A program made the position numbers and the translations under genes. A DNA stretch of 64,000 nucleotides from Blastocladiella emersonii ATCC 22665 (taxonomy: Eukaryota > Fungi > Blastocladiomycota): the NCBI GenBank assembly GCA_025594325.1, contig JANHCV010000016.1, positions 434,001-498,000 of the forward strand, in the 5' to 3' direction. The notes beneath the pieces are model-generated. The model saw nothing but the letters and a program-made list of their open reading frames with translations, searched no databases and was not told the DNA's origin. The number at the start of each line of letters is the position of its first letter. Position 1 is the first letter of the stretch. Below, piece after piece: positions 44,717-52,399 of this stretch.

Positions 44717-46900
44717 TTACTCCTCGGCGTACGACGGGTCGACGAGCGACGGGACCGGCAGCCCCGCGCGGTGCTGGAGAATCTTCTTCTGGATGTGGGG
44801 CCAGAAGTGCTTGACGCCGTACGCCTCGACGAGCTCGGGCCGCGTCCAGTCGTTGCCGTGGACGTGGCCGCGGCACGTCGCGGCGCCGCAGTTGCACTTG
44901 AACAGCGGGCGAGGCTCAGCGTCGGCCGTCGCATAGTCGAACGTCAGCTCGTCGCCCTTCTTGATGTCGCGGCGCGCGACCATCGTGTCGTAGCCCGTGT
45001 AGACCAGGTTCGGGTCGCAGTTGTGGTTGGTGAAGTAGCTCGGGTCCTCGTCGTACAGCGGCGGCGCGATCCACACGTCGTCCTCGGCCTGCTCGCCCAT
45101 GTGGTTGATGAAGGCCACGCGCCACGGCGCCATGGCCGCAATGTCGACTTCGTGCCGCAGGTACGTCTCGATCGGCCCGCGGAATAGCACCTCGCCCGCC
45201 GCAATGTCGGCCCCGGCAAACTGCCCGCGGCCCGCCGTCGGCGACGAACGCACCTCGACCTTGGGGCTCATGTAGTAGTCGTTGCCGTGGTACCACAGGT
45301 CGACGAGTGGCGCGCCCGCGGCACCCGCAGTCTCGTAGCTCGGACGCCCGCGCGGCACCGTAGTCCCGACCGTCCGCTTCGCCGTCAGCTCCTCGGCCAG
45401 GAACCCGAGCACCTCCTCGGGCGATGTCTCCTTGGCCGCGTACGACGAGTACTCGGCCGCCGCGTATCCGAGCTTCGGGTACGCGCGCAGCGTGAAGTGG
45501 CCGTCGCGCAGCGTCGCCGAGACCATGACGGCAGCCGCCGCCGGGTCGTCCTTGAACGCCGCCAGGTTCTCGTCCTCCTCGTCCTCGTCGTCGTACACGT
45601 CGAGCGCGACCACGGTCGCGTGCGAGAACTCGAGTCCACGGCGCACCGCAGCCACCAGGTCCGACGTGTCGTCGAGCAGCTCCTTGTCGCAGTCGAAGTA
45701 CTCGCGCAGCAGCGTCGCCCCGGGCACGGAGTCCGCGCGCATGCTGCCGGCGTGCTCGGACGGCGCGTACGACTTCTTGGCATCCGCATCAGCGGGCCGG
45801 TGCGCGTCGAGGACCGCGCGCACGCGCTTGCGCAGGGCGAGCGGGAGGTGGAACATGCCGAGGTGCGACTCGCCGTCGTAGTGGTCGAGGTCCTCGGACC
45901 CGTCGAACACGCGGCGCCGGATGTTGGCGTCGACGAGCGCCGGGCTCATGGCCGTCGGCGCGAGGTGCAGGTCCGACTGCGTCGCGTAGTAGAACTGGAA
46001 TGTCGAACCGACGCTCTCGACGCGCTGCGCGGCAACGTGAACGTGCGGGAACTGGCGCGCAAGGGCAGGGAGGAGGCCGAGACTCGTCGTGTCGCGCTCC
46101 GCGGCCGCGACCACGCCGCCGGGCGCCAGGAGCACGTCCGCGACGTGCGACAGGTGCGCGGCCGACGCCGCGACGTGGTCGACGAGCACCACGTCGTACT
46201 TGGCGTGCTGGCCCGACGACGCCCGCGACAGGAACGACTCGACGGTGACGTGCTTGACGCGGGCTTTGCGCAGAATGTCCGACACGTCGTCGTACTTGAA
46301 CTCGGCCGTCGTGTTGGCCGCAACCTCGATGTCGTAGTACGACTCGACGCGCGCCGTGTCACGAGCGGCGGCGCCCGACGCCGTCTCTTGGTCGAGGCCG
46401 GACACCCACACGATGTCGGTTAGCGTGAAGTGGCGAAGCGCCTCGGCGACCACCGACGCGCCGAGCGGGCCGAGGATGAGCACCTTGCGGGGCGTCGGGT
46501 CTAAGGCGCGCACCGTGTCAGTTCATGGAGGGCTTGCCGCTGCAGAGCCAAGTAACGTACGCCAGAGAAGCGCTGCATGCGTGAGCGACTCGGACCACAC
46601 GCGCTCGTCCGCGGGGCACAGCTGCGGCACGCCGCCGAGGACGAGGCAGTCGGCCGTCCGCGTCGGAGTGCGCGAGGCCGCCGCGGGTGCGGGCGCCGGA
46701 CTCGGGGCCAGGAACGACGCGGGCTGGATGGACTGCGGCGTGCCGTCGAGGTTGACGGTGATGGAGATGTAGCCGAGGCTCGCAAGCGTGGCGACCGACG
46801 CCAGGACCGCTAGGGCGGCAGTACCCGTCCACGACGACGCCGATGGCGCGACCTTGGAAGTCGAAGGCCGTGACGACGCGGCGCGAGACGTGGTTGACAT
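44717..46900 (-). CDS. Fusion A (707 aa): N-terminal TM anchor, degenerate spermidine-synthase-like domain, degenerate prokaryotic-type AdoMetDC domain, SET + post-SET methyltransferase
   Basis: Intron 46501-46560 gives ESLTHAALLW-HPTPRKVLILG. AdoMetDC-like segment EYFDCDKELLDD...LRDGHFTLRAYPKLGYAA...PRG. SET motifs GRGQFA, FTNHNCDPN, ELTFDY and CNCGAATCRG. Confidence 0.85.
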
Positions 46901-47334
46901 GATGTTGAGGGACTGCGCCAGCGCAGCGAAACAAGTTCCGAGTATTCTTGTGAGGGGAGCGGGGGCAGGCGCGGGGCACAGCCCGCTTTTGACGCTCGCC
47001 GAACGGCGCGGTCAAGCGAGTCATGATGCTGAACTGCGCCACGCGAAACCATGGCTAAGCCACCACCAGAGCCACCACGCGCCGCGAGCGTGATGAGCCG
47101 CGACAGGCCATCGCGCGACACGAGCGGGAGGCCGGGCGCACGGTCGAAGCACGCGCGCGGCCCTCTCACGAGTGGGCGTGCTGCCCGCGGCCGCCGCCTC
47201 GCTCTGCACGAGCGACCCGTACGACTCTGTGCCCTCGAGGACTCTGCGCCCGCCCGCCTGCTGCTCTTCGCGTGCTACCACCGACGCCGTCCCCAGCCAG
47301 CGCGACGGCGACCACTCGCACCACCGCCATCATC

Positions 47335-49417
47335 ATGTCCGCCGGCCCGCCCACCAACCTCGACACCGCACCGGCGGTGCCTGCGCCGCCCGACTCGGCC
47401 CAGGTCCCCGTCGACGACATGCACCGGCTTCCCGCTGCGGACTTTGGCCTATACGACTTCGCCGGCCACGACTCGGTCATCTTCCAGAACACGGGCCTGT
47501 TCGACGTCCAGCTCGCCTCGCTCGTCCGCCCCCTCGAGGACACCACGTACCTGCACCTACTGGAGCGCATGTTCGAGCCCAACGCAGGCTACTCGCACGA
47601 GACGGACGAGCGCGTCGCGACGCCCGAGGCGCTGCTCGCGCGCGCCTCCGAGTCGTTCGATCTCGCCGCAGACGAGCAGCGCCGCGCGCGTCCTGGCTAC
47701 CTGTCGCGCCTCACCTCGTTCGCCCTGCTCGCGTGCAAGAAGCGAGTCTACGACGCAGCCCGCCCGCTGTGGCTCTCGGTCATGGGCCCCGAGGCCCCTC
47801 TCTGTACGCTCGCTCGTCCTTGCCGCCGCGCCGTGGCGCACCGCCCCCGTCACCTCCGCGGCCAGCACGCTGACCCGTCCCCGCACGTGCCCAAACAATC
47901 ATGTAGTCGCCAGCAAGGACTCGCGCCCTGTGCCGATCCAGAACGGCGCTCCTGTCGCCGCCGCCGCCGCCGCCACCGCGGCCGAGGCGCGGACCGAGGC
48001 CGTGTGGACCTTCAGCAACACGCACATGCACGCCTGCTTCGCGGCCACGAACGCGCAGCTCGACCGCATCATCGCCACCCTCCCGCCCGTCACCGACTTG
48101 CGCGCCACGGTCACGCTCGCCACCCGCGCCCCGCCCGGCCCTACTGCGCGGTACGCGTACTTCAGCCCGCGCCAGCCGCACCACACGTCGATGGCGCGGG
48201 CCATGCCCGGCGCAGCCACCGGCAACGTCACCATGCCCGTCGTCGTGGGCGACGTCGTCCCCGTCAACGGCGTGTACTACTGGTCGTACCTCGTCGTGCC
48301 CCATGGCGTGGTCCCTGGCCAGCACCTCGCCGACGTTCTCGCCAGCACTGGCGTCGCCGCCGCCGCCCGCGTCGACATCCACAACACCGGTATCCCCGCG
48401 CAGGCCCGCCTCGTCCTACTCGAGGATCGCCCCGACCTCAACCTAGCCTCGTGGACGCCGCCCAACTTGGCGGCCCCGGTGACCGTCGTCGCCGAATCCG
48501 AGCGGTCGTACGTGGGCTACGGGCTCGACGCCGAGATCGAGGGCCTGCGTCGGTGCGTGTCGTCGTCTTGAGTAACCGCGTCTGCCGCCCACTGACCTTT
48601 CCGCTCCCGCACCACCTCCAGGCTCGCGTGGCCCGTGGCCGTCCTGCTCAAGTACAACCCGATCGCCGAGAACACGGACGTGACCATCGAGCCCCGCGAC
48701 AAGCTCGCCGCCGCCGCAGGAGATGAGGAGGAGGAGCAGAAGACTGGGACCGCGGGCGGCGACAAAATGGATGTCGACCCGACCGCGCCGCGGCAGCGCA
48801 CCAGCATCGAAAAGGAGACCGGCGCGGCCGAGATCGACGCCAAGGACGCGGCGTACCTTCTTCGGCTCGGCACCCGCACCGCGGCGGACTACCTCGTCTC
48901 GTCGCGGCGCGGCAAGGCCAAGGCCAAGGACCGCGGCACCAGTTCGTCGGCACCGTCGTCGACGGCGGCCTCGGGCCGCGCACCACCCGCCGCATCGGCG
49001 TCCAACCCGCAAGCACGCGCCGCCGCCGGTCGTAACCCGAGCGGCAAGCGGGACCAGTTCTACAAGCGCCGGCAAGCGCTCGTCAAGGAGTCCGTGACGT
49101 GCGCCGAGGAGATCGCCAAGGGCAACCGCCCCCGCACCACGCCGCGCATCGAGAACCACCTGCTGCTCAACGAGATGCGCGACAATGGCGACCCGTCCTA
49201 CGCGCTCGTGTACAAGTCCAACAACAAGTACTACCTGTACGCCGCGCCCGGGCGCCCGCGTGGGGCCATGGACCAGTGGGTCCGCAAGACGGTGCGCACG
49301 CAGACCGCGTACGAGCTCGAGCTCAAGCACAACAACTTTCCGACCTTCGAGGTGCTGACCAAGGCGCTCAAGGGCGCGCCGTTCCTCGACATGGAGCTCA
49401 TCTTCGGCCTGTGCTGA
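47335..49417 (+). CDS. Hypothetical 636-aa protein, 3 exons, with C-terminal MADS-box-like segment
   Basis: Introns 47804-47906 and 48553-48621 join three ORF pieces in frame (1911 nt). NPSGKRDQFYKRRQALVK and YALVYKSNNKYYLYA resemble the MADS helix and beta-hairpin. Confidence 0.6.
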
Positions 49418-50562
49418 GCAAAGTTCAGGGAGTTGCCTCTCTTGTGAGGGCGGACGGACGGACGGAATGACGGCGCGCCGCTAGGGCTAGAGCGCGGCCG
49501 CTGAGCATGACGGGCTTGAGGGAGCCGGAAGATGCGTGGAGGGAAACGATTTCTGGCGGAATAATACAACCGTAGCCAGCTTATCTCGGCGCTGGGCGGC
49601 AGAGTAACGACGAAGTTTGGGTTAGAGGTGAGCACAACGACTTAAGGCGAGACGTGTCACGAACATGGCCATCAGAGCCGCGATCAGCGACTCACACTTT
49701 CAGGGCTTGGGACTCCGGAGCAACTCAACCGCACGCACTCGAACAAGCGGGAGAAACTCGATGCACAAAAGCTCACCTCTGGCTGTAAACCCGCTCCAGT
49801 GCAACGGCTACGACCGCGCCGTCAACGGCCATGGCCGCGGAACCACAGTTCGCATGCTAGCGCGAGTGAAGATGCTTCCATCGCGACTAGTCAGGCCTTC
49901 TCCGCGAGCTAGTGCGCGTTTTCCCCTGCCGTTTGACAAGCACCAAGCAGTCCTGGTCAGTGGCAGGGACATGAAAACGCGCACCAGACCACCGGCAGGG
50001 ACACGAACGCTTCGGCCGAATGCACCGCGTGCAATCGAGATCGACGCCCCTTTTCGCAAGGTCTCTAATTGGCGATCGCTGCGGTTCGGCGCACCAGGTC
50101 TGGTGTTCAGAGCTCGAGCGGATGTAACGTTTCAGCCGGGTCGACGCGTGTGGACCCGTGGCGCATCGCGAACCTGGTACAGGCTTTGGTTGCGGCGCAG
50201 CGTTGCAGTCCACAGCCGCGCCGCGTTTAGCCGGGTGGCGTGACGTGGACGTACGAGCCTCGTCGACGCACCCGTGCCTACCGTACCTCGGGGAGCACAC
50301 GCGAGGGTAACTGATCTCCCCGAGCAGTGTCCATGCTGATCCACCCGGTGGACAGTGTTGAGCGCTCGGCATGATTCGTCTGAGCAAGTGCTGAGTCCTG
50401 GCCGTGCGACAATAGCAGGACGCGACGCGTTTCAAGGCGGATGGGGTGGGTGTGGCTGCTGCTGCGCCACCAAGCATTGCAGCCGCAGCCTCCCATGAGC
50501 CATGAGCCACACCATCGGCGCTTCCCTCGTGAGGTTTTCCCGGCGTGGGTGACGCAGGAAAA

Positions 50563-50572
50563 GTATATAACC
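50563..50572 (+). promoter_or_regulatory. TATA-like box upstream of fusion B
   Basis: AGTATATAAC about 120 bp before ATG 50690, in otherwise GC-rich DNA. A similar GTATATAACC lies about 200 bp upstream of SPT2. Confidence 0.45.
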
Positions 50573-50689
50573 ACGTCGCGCCCGCCACTAATCCAATCTA
50601 CTCATCAAACCTTCCATTGCTGGCTGGCCCAGCTCTTCTCTCCTCCCCCACACCCGCTCCGCCCATCTACTCCCACAGCCATCTCGACG

Positions 50690-52399
50690 ATGGCCAACAT
50701 CGTGACTCTCGACAAACTGCTCAAGTCGCCGCCCGCGTCGGCGCCGGCACCGTCACCAGCGCCGCGCATGGAGCGCCGAAAGTCGGTGGTCTCGTCAACG
50801 TCAGTCGTGAGCTACTGGGGCGAGCAGCGCACCATCCTGATGCTGTGCGGGCTCCTGCTGTGCTCGGTGCTCGTCAACGTCTTCTTCTCGTCGACCATCC
50901 AGCCCGCCACCTTCGCGCTCAACAACGCCTGGAGCAAGCGCCCGAACCTCGTGTGCGACATGGACGCTATCAGCAAGTCGCACCTGCCGACGGGCAAGCA
51001 GTACGTTTCTCTCGCAGGAAGTGATGGCCGCAATGATCATGGACTCACCTCGCGCACTCGCACGTCTCACAGCCACATGGTCGACCTGTACGGCGTGCCC
51101 GTCGAGAACGTGCGGTTCCTCGAGGAGTCCAAGATGCTGACCGAGGTGGCGTCGTACATTGCCAAGGCCGGGCTCACGCTGCTCGACTACTCGGCCTACC
51201 ACTTCGACTGCGGAGGCATCACGGCCGTGTTCCTGCTGTCCGAGTCGCACGTGTCGTTCCACTCGTGGCCCGAGCATGGGTTCGTCGCCCTCGACGTTTA
51301 CACGTGCGGCAAGGGCCGCCCCGAGCACATTGTCGACAAGTTCAAGGCGCTGCTGCAGCCGGCGGCCGTCCGCCACACGTTCCTCGAGCGCGGCGCCGAC
51401 CGCCACCTCGCCATGACCACTAACTCGGGCAACTTTGGCGGCATCGCCGCGAACGAGACCGAGTCGGCGGCGCCCATCGTGCGCCCGGTTGTCGCGTCCC
51501 CGCCGGCCAGCGCCGCCGAGGCCGCTCCCGTTCCCAGCAAGGCCGACGAGGTGGTGCAGCTCGCTCCCGGCCGCGTGTTCCCCGACGTGGCGCCGGTGGC
51601 GGCGACCGAGATCATGACCAAGAAGCTGATGGGCCCGTCGGCGCCCATGGACCTGTGCGTCAACGGCGACGGGCCCGAGGACGACTGCCTCCTGCTGCGC
51701 AACGCGGTGGTGCACGCGGACGTGCAGACGCCGTACCAGCGCATCGAGATTGTCGATACGCAGACGCTGGGCCGGTGCATGCTGCTGGACCGCGTGGTGC
51801 AGTTCTGCGAGGAGGACAACCACATCTACACGTCGCAGATCACGGACCGCGCCATGGCGACGCTCCCCGCGGACGACGGCCGCAAGCTCAACGTGACGAT
51901 CATCGGCGGCGGCGACGGGTGGGTGGCGTCGTACCTGCTGGACGCGTACGCGGACCGCATTGAGTCGATCCGGATCGTCGACATTGACGAGCAGGTGGCC
52001 AAGCTGACGCGCACCTTCTTCGACCCCGAGGGCGCAGCGTGGTCGTTCACGGACCCGCGCGTGCACTGGACATTCGTCGACGCCAACGTGTGGCTGGCCG
52101 ACCTGCCCGCGGGCGTCGCGCCCGGGTCCATGGACCTCGTCATCATCGACTGCACCGACCACACGGCCGAAGCCTCGAAGGTCCTGTACACGCGCGACTT
52201 TTACGCGAACGTGCGGCGGCTGATGCGCGCCGGCGCGGCGCTCACGCAGCAGGTCAACACGGTCGACCCCGACTACGCGCCCTTCTTCGACACGGTGCGC
52301 GCGCAGTGGGCCGACGCCGGGCTCAACGGGCTCTCCGAGTGGACCGCGTACATGCAGTCGTTCTCGGGCATGTCGCTCTTCTGGCTGGCGCACGCGTAA
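50690..52399 (+). CDS. Fusion B (545 aa): N-terminal TM anchor, prokaryotic class 1B S-adenosylmethionine decarboxylase, aminopropyltransferase (spermidine synthase family)
   Basis: Intron 51001-51072 gives GKHHMVDLYG. AdoMetDC motifs LLSESHVSFHSWPEHGFVALDVYTCG. Aminopropyltransferase motifs TPYQRIEI, MLLD, IIGGGDG, VDID and DLVIIDCTD. TM segment ILMLCGLLLCSVLVNVFF. Confidence 0.92.
   Translation: MANIVTLDKLLKSPPASAPAPSPAPRMERRKSVVSSTSVVSYWGEQRTILMLCGLLLCSVLVNVFFSSTIQPATFALNNAWSKRPNLVCDMDAISKSHLPTGKQYVSLAGSDGRNDHGLTSRTRTSHSHMVDLYGVPVENVRFLEESKMLTEVASYIAKAGLTLLDYSAYHFDCGGITAVFLLSESHVSFHSWPEHGFVALDVYTCGKGRPEHIVDKFKALLQPAAVRHTFLERGADRHLAMTTNSGNFGGIAANETESAAPIVRPVVASPPASAAEAAPVPSKADEVVQLAPGRVFPDVAPVAATEIMTKKLMGPSAPMDLCVNGDGPEDDCLLLRNAVVHADVQTPYQRIEIVDTQTLGRCMLLDRVVQFCEEDNHIYTSQITDRAMATLPADDGRKLNVTIIGGGDGWVASYLLDAYADRIESIRIVDIDEQVAKLTRTFFDPEGAAWSFTDPRVHWTFVDANVWLADLPAGVAPGSMDLVIIDCTDHTAEASKVLYTRDFYANVRRLMRAGAALTQQVNTVDPDYAPFFDTVRAQWADAGLNGLSEWTAYMQSFSGMSLFWLAHA

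What the first reader, a model, noticed from the sequence alone, without database searches (positions are those of the whole stretch)
44717..52399. Candidate two-gene, membrane-anchored system for synthesising and N-methylating unusual polyamines
Seen: two genes whose starts lie 3.8 kb apart, divergently oriented with one gene between them, use the same rare parts. Each has a single N-terminal TM anchor, a prokaryotic-type (class 1B) AdoMetDC fold and a spermidine-synthase fold, in reciprocal order. B is TM-AdoMetDC-APT; A is TM-APT-AdoMetDC-SET. Established: ordinary fungal polyamine synthesis uses separate soluble cytosolic enzymes and the larger eukaryotic class 1A AdoMetDC. AdoMetDC-aminopropyltransferase fusions, some with SET domains and secretion signals, have been described in diatoms and proposed to make N-methylated long-chain polyamines. 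Inference: this locus encodes a secretory-pathway module in a fungus-like organism. B would make dcSAM and add aminopropyl units, and A would N-methylate the product or a polyaminated acceptor (lipid, wall polymer or protein). I do not know of such a system described in fungi.
Basis: partly seen in the sequence, partly recalled or inferred. Interest (0 to 1): 0.92.

Follow-up and report, generated by a model that had tools for sequence, protein, structure and literature searches.

The report
Paired membrane-anchored polyamine-modifying genes in water moulds
Blastocladiella emersonii and at least seven other zoosporic fungi keep two neighbouring genes together: an apparently active enzyme that should make and attach aminopropyl (polyamine) units, and a partner with dead copies of the same two domains plus a live methyltransferase, resembling the machinery proposed to build long-chain polyamines in diatoms.

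Summary
The window is Blastocladiella emersonii ATCC 22665.

[quoted passage not shown] Every catalytic residue I checked is intact.
- **Gene A** (44717-46900 -, one 60-nt intron, 707 aa) is an anchor, an APT fold, an AdoMetDC fold and a SET/post-SET domain. Its APT and AdoMetDC domains lack the catalytic residues in every family member examined. The SET motifs are intact.
- **New here:** A and B sit head-to-head in eight genomes of Blastocladiomycota and Chytridiomycota, with unrelated flanks. Only B. emersonii has a gene between them.
- **Location:** charge distribution, clade-specific cysteine pairs and a conserved N-x-T sequon suggest luminal catalytic domains.
- **Origin:** A's SET domain is not closely related to the SET of a diatom-type fusion, so the resemblance looks convergent.

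Best reading: a two-subunit secretory-pathway machine. B makes dcSAM and aminopropylates an amine acceptor. A docks or holds the product and N-methylates it. Product, acceptor, topology and physical interaction are all inferred; no RNA data were available.

I found no description of this in fungi in the searchable literature. Earlier scan notes on this same stretch agree; none is on other DNA.

The parts
44717..46900 (-). Gene A (707 aa, = P0036, mis-named 'putative protein serine/threonine kinase'). Exon 2 is 44717-46500, the intron is 46501-46560, and exon 1 is 46561-46900.
   Evidence: The ORFs and a GTACGT...TTAG intron join in frame. The deposited protein has the same length and 100% identity over exon 2, and the annotated gene has the same span.
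46760..46822 (-). A: N-terminal hydrophobic anchor (aa 27-47).
   Evidence: Kyte-Doolittle hydropathy is 1.8-1.9. AlphaFold models a helix at 24-41. The N-terminal flank carries more positive charge than the C-terminal flank in most orthologues.
45851..46651 (-). A: degenerate aminopropyltransferase fold (aa about 84-330, spanning the intron). GGGDG is replaced by GPLGAS (46454-46471). A conserved Cys85/Cys95 pair lies at 46616-46648.
   Evidence: Foldseek matches SpeE/TSPS. Bacterial fusions hit this region at E about 1e-26. The B-type APT HMM hits the A family at 1e-25 to 1e-6. The motif table shows the losses.
45341..45733 (-). A: degenerate class-1b AdoMetDC fold (aa about 370-500). The Glu-Ser-His processing site is replaced by Asp-Gly-His (45497-45505).
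   Evidence: Pfam PF02675 at 2.4e-8. The pyruvoyl Ser, the processing His and the Cys are absent in the A-family members that could be aligned.
44861..45268 (-). A: SET and post-SET domain (aa about 525-660). NHNC is at 45017-45028, FDY at 44933-44941 and CNCGAATC at 44873-44896. A conserved C-terminal extension runs to 44720.
   Evidence: Pfam SET at 1.8e-10. These are invariant columns in 11 family members. The nearest solved structures are KMT2/MLL SET domains at 8e-17; BurB is also hit.
47335..49417 (+). Intervening gene (annotated 636 aa, spliced, no Pfam family). It is absent from between A and B in the other seven genomes.
   Evidence: Annotated span. GC3 of about 0.9 in the coding frames. 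No Pfam hit. No tblastn match in the other loci.
50690..52399 (+). Gene B (545 aa, = P0001, H9P43_010027, 'hypothetical protein'). Exon 1 is 50690-51000, the in-frame intron is 51001-51072, and exon 2 is 51073-52399.
   Evidence: GTACGT...CACAG intron. The deposited 545-aa protein has the KHHMV junction.
50831..50887 (+). B: N-terminal hydrophobic anchor (aa 48-66). It follows a 47-aa basic N-terminal tail.
   Evidence: Hydropathy of 2.47. AlphaFold models a helix at 40-81.
50981..51397 (+). B: class-1b AdoMetDC domain (aa 98-212, spanning the intron). The Glu161-Ser162-His163 self-processing site is at 51242-51250 and Cys182 at 51305-51307.
   Evidence: Pfam at 1e-22. PDB matches 2iii and 1tlu. 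All seven catalytic columns are conserved. pLDDT is above 90.
51647..52396 (+). B: aminopropyltransferase domain (aa 296-545). GGGDG is at 51905-51919 and DCTD at 52148-52159. Clade-specific Cys pairs are C299/C309 and C339/C349.
   Evidence: Pfam PF17284 and PF01564. The best PDB match is Pyrobaculum SpeE 7xif at 1e-22. Motif table. Cys pairs are present in 18/18 eukaryotic members and absent from bacterial fusions.

Best explanation
A and B encode the two subunits of a membrane-anchored module that builds and N-methylates aminopropyl (polyamine-type) chains inside the secretory pathway.

Both proteins are inserted by an N-terminal signal anchor, with the short basic N-terminus in the cytosol and the catalytic domains in the lumen (inferred).

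B is the synthetic subunit:
- Its class-1b AdoMetDC domain self-cleaves at Glu161-Ser162 to form the pyruvoyl cofactor and decarboxylates SAM.
- Its APT domain transfers the aminopropyl group to an amine acceptor.
- The residues for both steps are shown to be present. The activity and the acceptor are inferred.
- The altered substrate-side motifs and the closest solved relatives point to something longer than putrescine. YT.. replaces YHE, and DCTDH replaces DSSDP. The closest solved relatives are thermophile triamine/agmatine APTs and thermospermine synthase.

A cannot do either reaction, because its pyruvoyl Ser, processing His, Cys, GGGDG Asp and Tyr are all lost. It keeps both folds and one amine-binding Asp (D216). 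Its dead domains most likely dock onto B's homologous domains, or hold the growing chain, in the manner of a prozyme. This presents the terminal amine to A's intact SET/post-SET domain, which methylates it.

The design matches the diatom AdoMetDC-APT(-SET) fusions proposed to make N-methylated long-chain polyamines. Here it is split into two polypeptides held together by a shared divergent promoter.
For: - **Identity and domains:**
- **Catalytic residues:** B, the reference bacterial fusions and the diatom-type fusion P0025 keep the AdoMetDC Glu-Ser-His site, processing His, Asp and Cys (P0025 differs only at E171), and the APT Tyr, GGGDG (Asp or Glu at its fourth position) and acidic residues. 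Every A-family member lacks them (alignments).
- **SET domain:** NHxC, ELTxDY and the post-SET cysteines are invariant in A. The domain is KMT2-like.
- **Directly adjacent, head-to-head:**
  - Catenaria, gap 1725 bp
  - B. britannica, 448 bp
  - Sorochytrium, 549 bp
  - Spizellomyces punctatus
  - Fimicolochytrium
  - Lobulomyces
  - Cladochytrium
- **Wider linkage:** the two genes are on the same contig in Spizellomyces 'palustris'. Flanking genes differ between species, so only the pair is conserved.
- **Secretory or luminal placement:**
  - the positive-inside pattern;
  - two Cys pairs conserved 18/18 in eukaryotic B but absent in bacterial fusions;
  - a homologous pair conserved 15/15 in A;
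  - a conserved N-x-T/S sequon in 12 chytrid A proteins.
- **Diatom precedent:** PMC3820600 and PMC6356823, citing Michael 2011. By protein-language-model features, A's nearest cluster is the Bacillariophyta Spermine_synth+AdoMet_dc+SET family, score 0.94.
- **SET enzymes on small molecules:** BurB, PMC12542666.
Against: - There is no expression, localisation, interaction or product data. No RNA run was listed, and the runs found were DNA.
- Topology rests on sequence rules only. A luminal enzyme needs SAM import, and I have no evidence of a transporter.
- No long-chain or methylated polyamines are known to me from these fungi, which do not make silica.
- The A-B interaction is inferred from homologous folds and linkage alone.
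- A's SET is closest to protein-lysine methyltransferases, so its substrate may be a protein.
- Unlinked A-like paralogues exist in Spizellomycetales, some without SET. The scaffold can therefore work without a SET domain or without adjacency.
Confidence: 0.5

Rival explanations
1. B alone is a membrane-tethered synthase of an ordinary polyamine (spermidine, spermine or thermospermine, as UniRef's automatic name for the Catenaria orthologue suggests). A is a functionally separate SET protein-lysine methyltransferase that merely shares a promoter region.
For: B has all it needs for de novo aminopropylation. Bacterial AdoMetDC-APT fusions make spermidine or spermine (PMC12803844). A's SET is KMT2-like.
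Against: A carries degenerate copies of exactly B's two domains. The pair is kept head-to-head in eight genomes of two phyla while everything around it changes. B's substrate-side motifs and extra Cys pairs set its clade apart from canonical synthases. An unverified scan note reports a canonical AdoMetDC elsewhere in this genome.
Confidence: 0.15
2. The same two-subunit machine, but facing the cytosol. The N-terminal helix tethers both proteins to an organelle or plasma membrane, where cytosolic SAM is available. The products are handed to a transporter, vesicle or membrane lipid.
For: SAM is cytosolic. In B. emersonii B itself, the charge difference across the anchor is 0 vs 0 within 15 residues. 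No signal-peptide or topology predictor was available.
Against: Most orthologues have a more basic N-flank, and several A members have classical short signal-peptide-like N-termini. Clade-specific conserved Cys pairs and a conserved sequon fit an oxidising, glycosylating compartment.
Confidence: 0.2
3. A is mainly a regulatory pseudoenzyme (prozyme-like activator or inhibitor of B). Its SET domain methylates a protein lysine on B, on A, or on a secretory cargo protein, rather than polyamine nitrogens.
For: Dead paralogues that activate the live enzyme are established for trypanosomatid AdoMetDC (my own knowledge). The SET motifs are those of lysine methyltransferases. A-like paralogues without SET exist.
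Against: The terminal aminopropyl amine is chemically lysine-like, and diatom long-chain polyamines are N-methylated. The strict retention of SET in all linked A copies argues that methylation is integral to the pair. Nothing here distinguishes protein from polyamine substrates.
Confidence: 0.15

Closest known systems
Diatom AdoMetDC-aminopropyltransferase(-SET) fusion proteins proposed to synthesise and N-methylate long-chain polyamines (Michael 2011, FEBS Lett 585:2627; cited in PMC3820600, PMC6356823, PMC12803844)
   Same: A bacterial-type class-1b AdoMetDC is joined to an APT. It is associated with a eukaryotic SET methyltransferase domain and has an N-terminal hydrophobic targeting segment. 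A diatom-type example, P0025, has the order TM-AdoMetDC-APT-SET. By protein-language-model features, A's nearest cluster is the Bacillariophyta family.
   Different: - The functions are split over two genes.
- The SET sits on a partner whose APT and AdoMetDC domains are dead and in reversed order.
- The APT tree puts the diatom-type protein with the bacterial sequences, not with B or A.
- A's SET is barely similar to the P0025 SET (E 0.007 over 20 aa), so the fusions arose independently.
- The host organisms are non-silicifying fungi.
Bacterial AdoMetDC-APT fusion proteins (functional spermidine/spermine synthases; PMC12803844; Green et al. 2011, not held)
   Same: Same domain order as B. All catalytic residues are shared. 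They are significant homologues of both B and A's APT region.
   Different: The bacterial proteins have no membrane anchor, no long disordered linker, no clade-specific Cys pairs and no SET partner. They keep the C-terminal YYDG..H..MF segment, which B has lost and A retains.
Animal spermine synthase (N-terminal dead class-1b AdoMetDC-like domain plus APT; PMC12803844)
   Same: It is a precedent for a horizontally acquired AdoMetDC-APT fusion in an opisthokont. The AdoMetDC domain lost catalysis but is kept for dimerisation.
   Different: In the fungal pair the intact and the dead versions coexist as separate, linked genes. Human SpmSyn was not among B's PDB sequence matches.
Trypanosomatid AdoMetDC prozyme (dead paralogue that heterodimerises with and activates the enzyme; my own knowledge)
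   Same: A catalytically dead paralogue of a polyamine enzyme is retained under selection next to the live one.
   Different: That system uses class-1a AdoMetDC, is cytosolic, and has no APT or SET domain. Heterodimerisation of A with B is untested.

Membership tests
Class-1b (SpeH-type) pyruvoyl AdoMetDC, PF02675 | HMM or fold match | tested here: met
   B scores 81 bits and A 34.7 bits, both above the 25-bit cutoff. B matches PDB 2iii, 1tlu and 1vr7.
Class-1b (SpeH-type) pyruvoyl AdoMetDC, PF02675 | Glu-Ser self-processing site, processing His and catalytic Cys | tested here: met
   This row is for B. E161, S162, H167 and C182 are present, as in all reference fusions.
Class-1b (SpeH-type) pyruvoyl AdoMetDC, PF02675 | The same catalytic residues in gene A | tested here: not met
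   A has D-G-H in place of E-S-H, Arg in place of the processing His and Tyr in place of the Cys. All aligned A-family members lack the Ser. A's domain is therefore a pseudoenzyme with the fold only.
Polyamine aminopropyltransferase (PABS, PF01564) | Fold with N-terminal beta-hairpin domain | tested here: met
   B matches PF17284 and PF01564. A's model matches SpeE/TSPS with Foldseek probability 1.0 over about 270 aligned columns.
Polyamine aminopropyltransferase (PABS, PF01564) | dcSAM loop GGG(D/E)G, the Tyr, and the acidic residues of the VDID, DA and DxxD motifs | tested here: met
   This row is for B; all are present. The residues after the Tyr (YT.., canonical YHE) and the gate loop (DCTDHT, canonical DSSDP) differ from the canonical forms.
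Polyamine aminopropyltransferase (PABS, PF01564) | The same motifs in gene A | tested here: not met
   GPLGAS replaces GGGDG, with a two-residue deletion. Tyr is replaced by Trp, His or Leu, and the second Asp of DxxD is lost. Only D216 is nearly invariant.
SET-domain N-methyltransferase (PF00856) with post-SET | GxG, NHxC, ELxxDY tyrosine and the post-SET CxCxxxxC zinc cluster | tested here: met
   These are invariant in 11 A-family members. Pfam gives 1.8e-10. KMT2A SET matches at 8e-17. Activity was not tested.
Diatom long-chain-polyamine fusion family (Michael 2011) | AdoMetDC, APT and SET in one polypeptide, orthologous to the diatom genes | tested here: not met
   The functions are split over two genes. 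In the APT tree, B and A each form their own clade apart from diatom-type P0025. The SET domains are only marginally similar.
Diatom long-chain-polyamine fusion family (Michael 2011) | Secretory-pathway targeting | tested here: inconclusive
   Single N-terminal hydrophobic segments, the positive-inside trend, conserved Cys pairs and a sequon support it. No dedicated predictor or experiment was available.
Diatom long-chain-polyamine fusion family (Michael 2011) | The organism makes N-methylated long-chain polyamines | not testable with these tools
   This needs LC-MS. No paper in the held library links chytrids or Blastocladiella with long-chain polyamines.
Prozyme-type pseudoenzyme partner | A catalytically dead paralogue that heteromerises with the live enzyme | tested here: inconclusive
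   Dead domains are shown and linkage is shown. Heteromerisation is not testable here, because only single-chain prediction is offered.

The most novel reading that the evidence does not exclude
Zoosporic fungi (Chytridiomycota and Blastocladiomycota) possess an ancient pathway, evolved convergently with that of diatoms. It builds N-methylated oligo- or long-chain polyamines, or polyamine-modified lysines on secreted proteins, inside the secretory pathway. The machine is a heteromer of a live AdoMetDC-APT enzyme and a pseudoenzyme-scaffolded SET methyltransferase. The products would be a so far unknown component of the zoospore, cyst or cell-wall surface.
Probability: 0.3. Interest if true: 0.85.

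Novelty: new variant of a known kind. Interest (0 to 1): 0.7.

Why it matters
Long-chain and N-methylated polyamines are known mainly from silica-forming organisms, and even in diatoms their biosynthetic enzymes are still uncharacterised (PMC12803844 lists them as an open problem). A much simpler two-gene version offers a tractable route to the enzymology. It occurs in culturable fungi, including Spizellomyces, which as far as I know can be transformed. The questions it opens include which acceptor is used, how chain length is set, and whether a SET domain can methylate polyamine nitrogens.

It would also add three things:
- a new class of extracytoplasmic polyamine chemistry in fungi;
- a clear case of pseudoenzyme domains retained as a scaffold;
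- one of the more deeply conserved divergent gene pairs in early-diverging fungi.

It also corrects current annotations of these proteins, which include 'protein serine/threonine kinase', 'spermidine synthase' and 'thermospermine synthase'.

Tried and rejected
- **RNA evidence for introns and co-expression.** No RNA run was listed. The four runs that hold the locus are DNA from one sample; a contig crosses A's splice acceptor unspliced. I did not use the second read-laying run.
- **Primary papers.** Michael 2011 and Green et al. 2011 are not held. What they say about fungi could not be checked. The diatom precedent rests on citing reviews.
- **Origin of A.** The APT tree separates the A, B and bacterial groups but does not resolve their order. 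A is not nested in B, and it keeps a C-terminal APT segment that B lacks. I therefore rejected 'A is a simple duplicate of B'.
- **Second Cladochytrium B paralogue (L006).** It has a SET-domain neighbour, but that gene is KMT5-like and unrelated to A. It is not counted as a pair.
- **Metagenomic B relatives (P0015, P0018, P0021 group).**
  - Cluster look-ups gave no taxon.
  - The two contigs read showed no A-like gene: L004 over about 10 kb upstream, L012 over about 10 kb downstream.
  - In L012 the gene lies 633 bp from the contig end, so its upstream neighbour is unseen.
- **Intervening gene as a MADS-box protein.** There is no SRF-TF or other significant Pfam hit.
- **Gaertneriomyces A-like paralogue.** It is not next to a B gene.
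- **Animal spermine synthase as nearest relative of B.** It is not among the PDB sequence hits.

Full report
**What is there**

The window is GC-rich (65-72% around the locus). It comes from Blastocladiella emersonii ATCC 22665: gene B's product is the deposited protein H9P43_010027 (P0001), and gene A's is P0036.

Gene A lies at 44717-46900 on the minus strand. Its two ORFs are joined by a 60-nt GTACGT...TTAG intron (46501-46560), giving 707 aa, the length of P0036.

Gene B lies at 50690-52399 on the plus strand. It contains an in-frame 72-nt GTACGT...CACAG intron (51001-51072). Removing it gives 545 aa and the junction ...GKHHMVDLYG, as in P0001.

The two start codons are 3790 bp apart and the genes diverge. 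Between them lies one spliced, annotated 636-aa gene (47335-49417 +). It has strong GC3 periodicity but no Pfam family.

**Domains**

B has three parts:
- a very hydrophobic segment at residues 48-66, after a basic 47-residue tail;
- a class-1b AdoMetDC domain (PF02675, E 1e-22);
- after a roughly 50-residue disordered linker, an aminopropyltransferase (APT) domain (PF17284 and PF01564).

B's closest solved structures are Pyrobaculum SpeE, plant spermidine synthases, thermospermine synthase, Thermus triamine/agmatine APT and bacterial AdoMetDC.

A has a hydrophobic segment at 27-47, an AdoMetDC match above Pfam's threshold (34.7 bits) and a SET domain. Pfam does not see its N-terminal APT domain in this species, but three results show it is real:
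- Bacterial AdoMetDC-APT fusions hit residues 63-325 of the A-family profile at E about 1e-26.
- Chytrid orthologues score on PF01564 directly.
- The AlphaFold model (pLDDT 74, pTM 0.71) matches SpeE and thermospermine synthase structures over about 270 columns with Foldseek probability 1.0.

**Live and dead domains**

I aligned both families to HMMs built from the B clade and read off the catalytic columns.

B, its fungal and metagenomic relatives, a diatom-type fusion and bacterial fusions keep almost all of these:
- for AdoMetDC: the Glu-Ser-His processing site (Ser162 becomes the pyruvoyl group), the processing His167, Glu171, Asp178 and Cys182;
- for APT: Tyr356, GGG(D/E)G, and the acidic residues of VDID, DA and DxxD.

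The exceptions are P0025 at Glu171 and Thr465, and occasional conservative substitutions in the bacterial fusions. None affects the pyruvoyl Ser, the processing His or the Cys.

Every A-family member lacks the pyruvoyl serine; in B. emersonii the site reads D-G-H. Cys182 is never retained, and His167 survives only in some Spizellomycetales paralogues that still lack the Ser. The dcSAM loop is shortened and degenerate (GPLGAS here), and the Tyr and the second Asp of DxxD are gone. One Asp (D216) is nearly invariant. A's two polyamine-enzyme domains are therefore ancient pseudoenzymes.

In contrast, A's SET domain keeps GxG, NHNC, ELTFDY and the post-SET CNCGxxxC cluster invariantly in 11 members. 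It is most like KMT2/MLL SET domains (8e-17). BurB, the small-molecule methyltransferase, is also matched (PMC12542666).

B's APT differs from canonical enzymes on the acceptor side. It has YT.. instead of YHE, GGGDGW, and DCTDHT instead of DSSDP. It has also lost the C-terminal YYDG..H..MF segment, which A retains.

**Conserved linkage**

This is the main new result. The A orthologue and the B orthologue are immediate head-to-head neighbours in:
- Catenaria anguillulae, gap 1725 bp;
- Blastocladiella britannica, 448 bp;
- Sorochytrium milnesiophthora, 549 bp;
- the chytrids Spizellomyces punctatus, Fimicolochytrium jonesii, Lobulomyces angularis and Cladochytrium replicatum.

In Spizellomyces 'palustris' both genes are on one contig. 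The genes flanking the pair differ in every species.

B. emersonii is the only one with an inserted gene. That gene has no counterpart in the other loci.

Full-length A-like proteins found by a profile search of 1.8 billion representatives number about twenty clusters. All the named ones are zoosporic fungi. Spizellomycetales also have unlinked A-like paralogues, some without SET.

**Where the domains sit**

No topology predictor was available, so this part is inference:
- In most orthologues the N-terminal flank of the hydrophobic segment is more basic than the C-terminal flank. Several A proteins begin like classical signal peptides.
- The eukaryotic B clade has two cysteine pairs, each ten residues apart (C299/C309 and C339/C349). 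They are conserved in 18 of 18 sequences and absent from bacterial fusions.
- A has a pair (C85/C95, 15 of 15) at the homologous hairpin.
- Twelve chytrid A proteins share an N-x-T/S sequon in an otherwise variable loop.

Together these favour luminal or extracytoplasmic catalytic domains. The unsolved problem is the supply of SAM to that compartment.

**Relation to the diatom system**

Reviews citing Michael (2011) describe diatom fusions of bacterial-type AdoMetDC and APT, sometimes with a histone-methyltransferase domain. They are proposed to make and N-methylate long-chain polyamines. The Michael lab's 2025 paper still lists them as uncharacterised. It does not mention such fusions in chytrids or blastoclads.

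A diatom-type protein from the databases (P0025) has the order TM-AdoMetDC-APT-SET. By protein-language-model features, A's nearest cluster is the Bacillariophyta Spermine_synth+AdoMet_dc+SET family.

However, in an APT tree the B clade (100/100) and the A clade (99/94) are each separate from the bacterial and diatom-type sequences. A's SET is only marginally similar to that of P0025. The fungal pair is therefore a convergent, split version of the design, not a member of the diatom family. The tree does not resolve where A came from.

**Mechanism proposed**

B self-processes, decarboxylates SAM and transfers aminopropyl groups to an acceptor that is probably longer than putrescine. The residues are shown; the activity is inferred.

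A is anchored in the same membrane and expressed from the same intergenic region. It uses its dead APT and AdoMetDC folds to dock on B or to hold the chain, and methylates terminal amines with its SET domain. All of this is inferred. I put this at about 0.5.

The rivals are:
- an ordinary polyamine synthase with an unrelated neighbour (0.15);
- the same machine facing the cytosol (0.2);
- A as a regulator whose SET acts on protein lysines (0.15).

**Limits**

No RNA data could be obtained. The two key primary papers are not held. Searches of the held literature found nothing on this system in fungi, but that library is incomplete.

Earlier scan notes on this same stretch say the same things about A's pseudo-domains, B's altered motif and B's intron. 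I checked those here. They are re-readings of this DNA, not independent finds on other DNA.

**Verdict**

The system is a new variant of a known kind, and its interest is about 0.7.

Noticed in passing
window 47335-49417 (+): The gene between A and B (annotated 636 aa, spliced, GC3 about 0.9) has no Pfam family. It has no counterpart between or near the A-B pairs of the other seven genomes, so it looks like a lineage-specific insertion into an ancestral bidirectional promoter. The MADS-box idea from another scan note gets no support from Pfam at E up to 0.1.
   Followed up: partly
L003:15230-16043 (Sorochytrium milnesiophthora): An ornithine decarboxylase antizyme gene (PF02100) lies about 3 kb downstream of the A orthologue. 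This is a second polyamine-related gene near the pair in this species only.
   Followed up: no
window 49500-50000: The spacer upstream of B is less GC-rich (0.59, against 0.65-0.72 around it), as another scan note said.
   Followed up: no
window 49544-49890, run X4: A short contig of run X4 is flanked on both sides by loxP-like letters (ATAACTTCGTATAGCATACATTATACGAAGTTAT halves). This is most likely a Cre-lox mate-pair library linker, not biology.
   Followed up: no
protein atlas clusters: Clusters of AdoMetDC-APT fusion proteins are recorded mainly from giant viruses (Nucleocytoviricota) and from tailed phages (Uroviricota), besides bacteria and diatoms.
   Followed up: no
P0064, P0067, P0069-P0077, P0065: A's SET domain is strongly similar (E 1e-40 to 1e-63) to a family of unnamed proteins with two tandem SET domains. 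It is also similar to a Mesostigma viride protein with five SET domains. Their function and most of their taxa are unknown.
   Followed up: partly
L006:6127-6651 (Cladochytrium replicatum): The second, unpaired B paralogue also has a SET-domain gene head-to-head with it. That gene is KMT5/Set9-like and unrelated to A, so the adjacency is probably coincidence.
   Followed up: yes
P0036, P0039, P0212, P0002: Public names for these proteins are misleading. A is called 'putative protein serine/threonine kinase' in two species and 'spermidine synthase' in Spizellomyces. B is called 'thermospermine synthase' in UniRef for Catenaria.
   Followed up: yes
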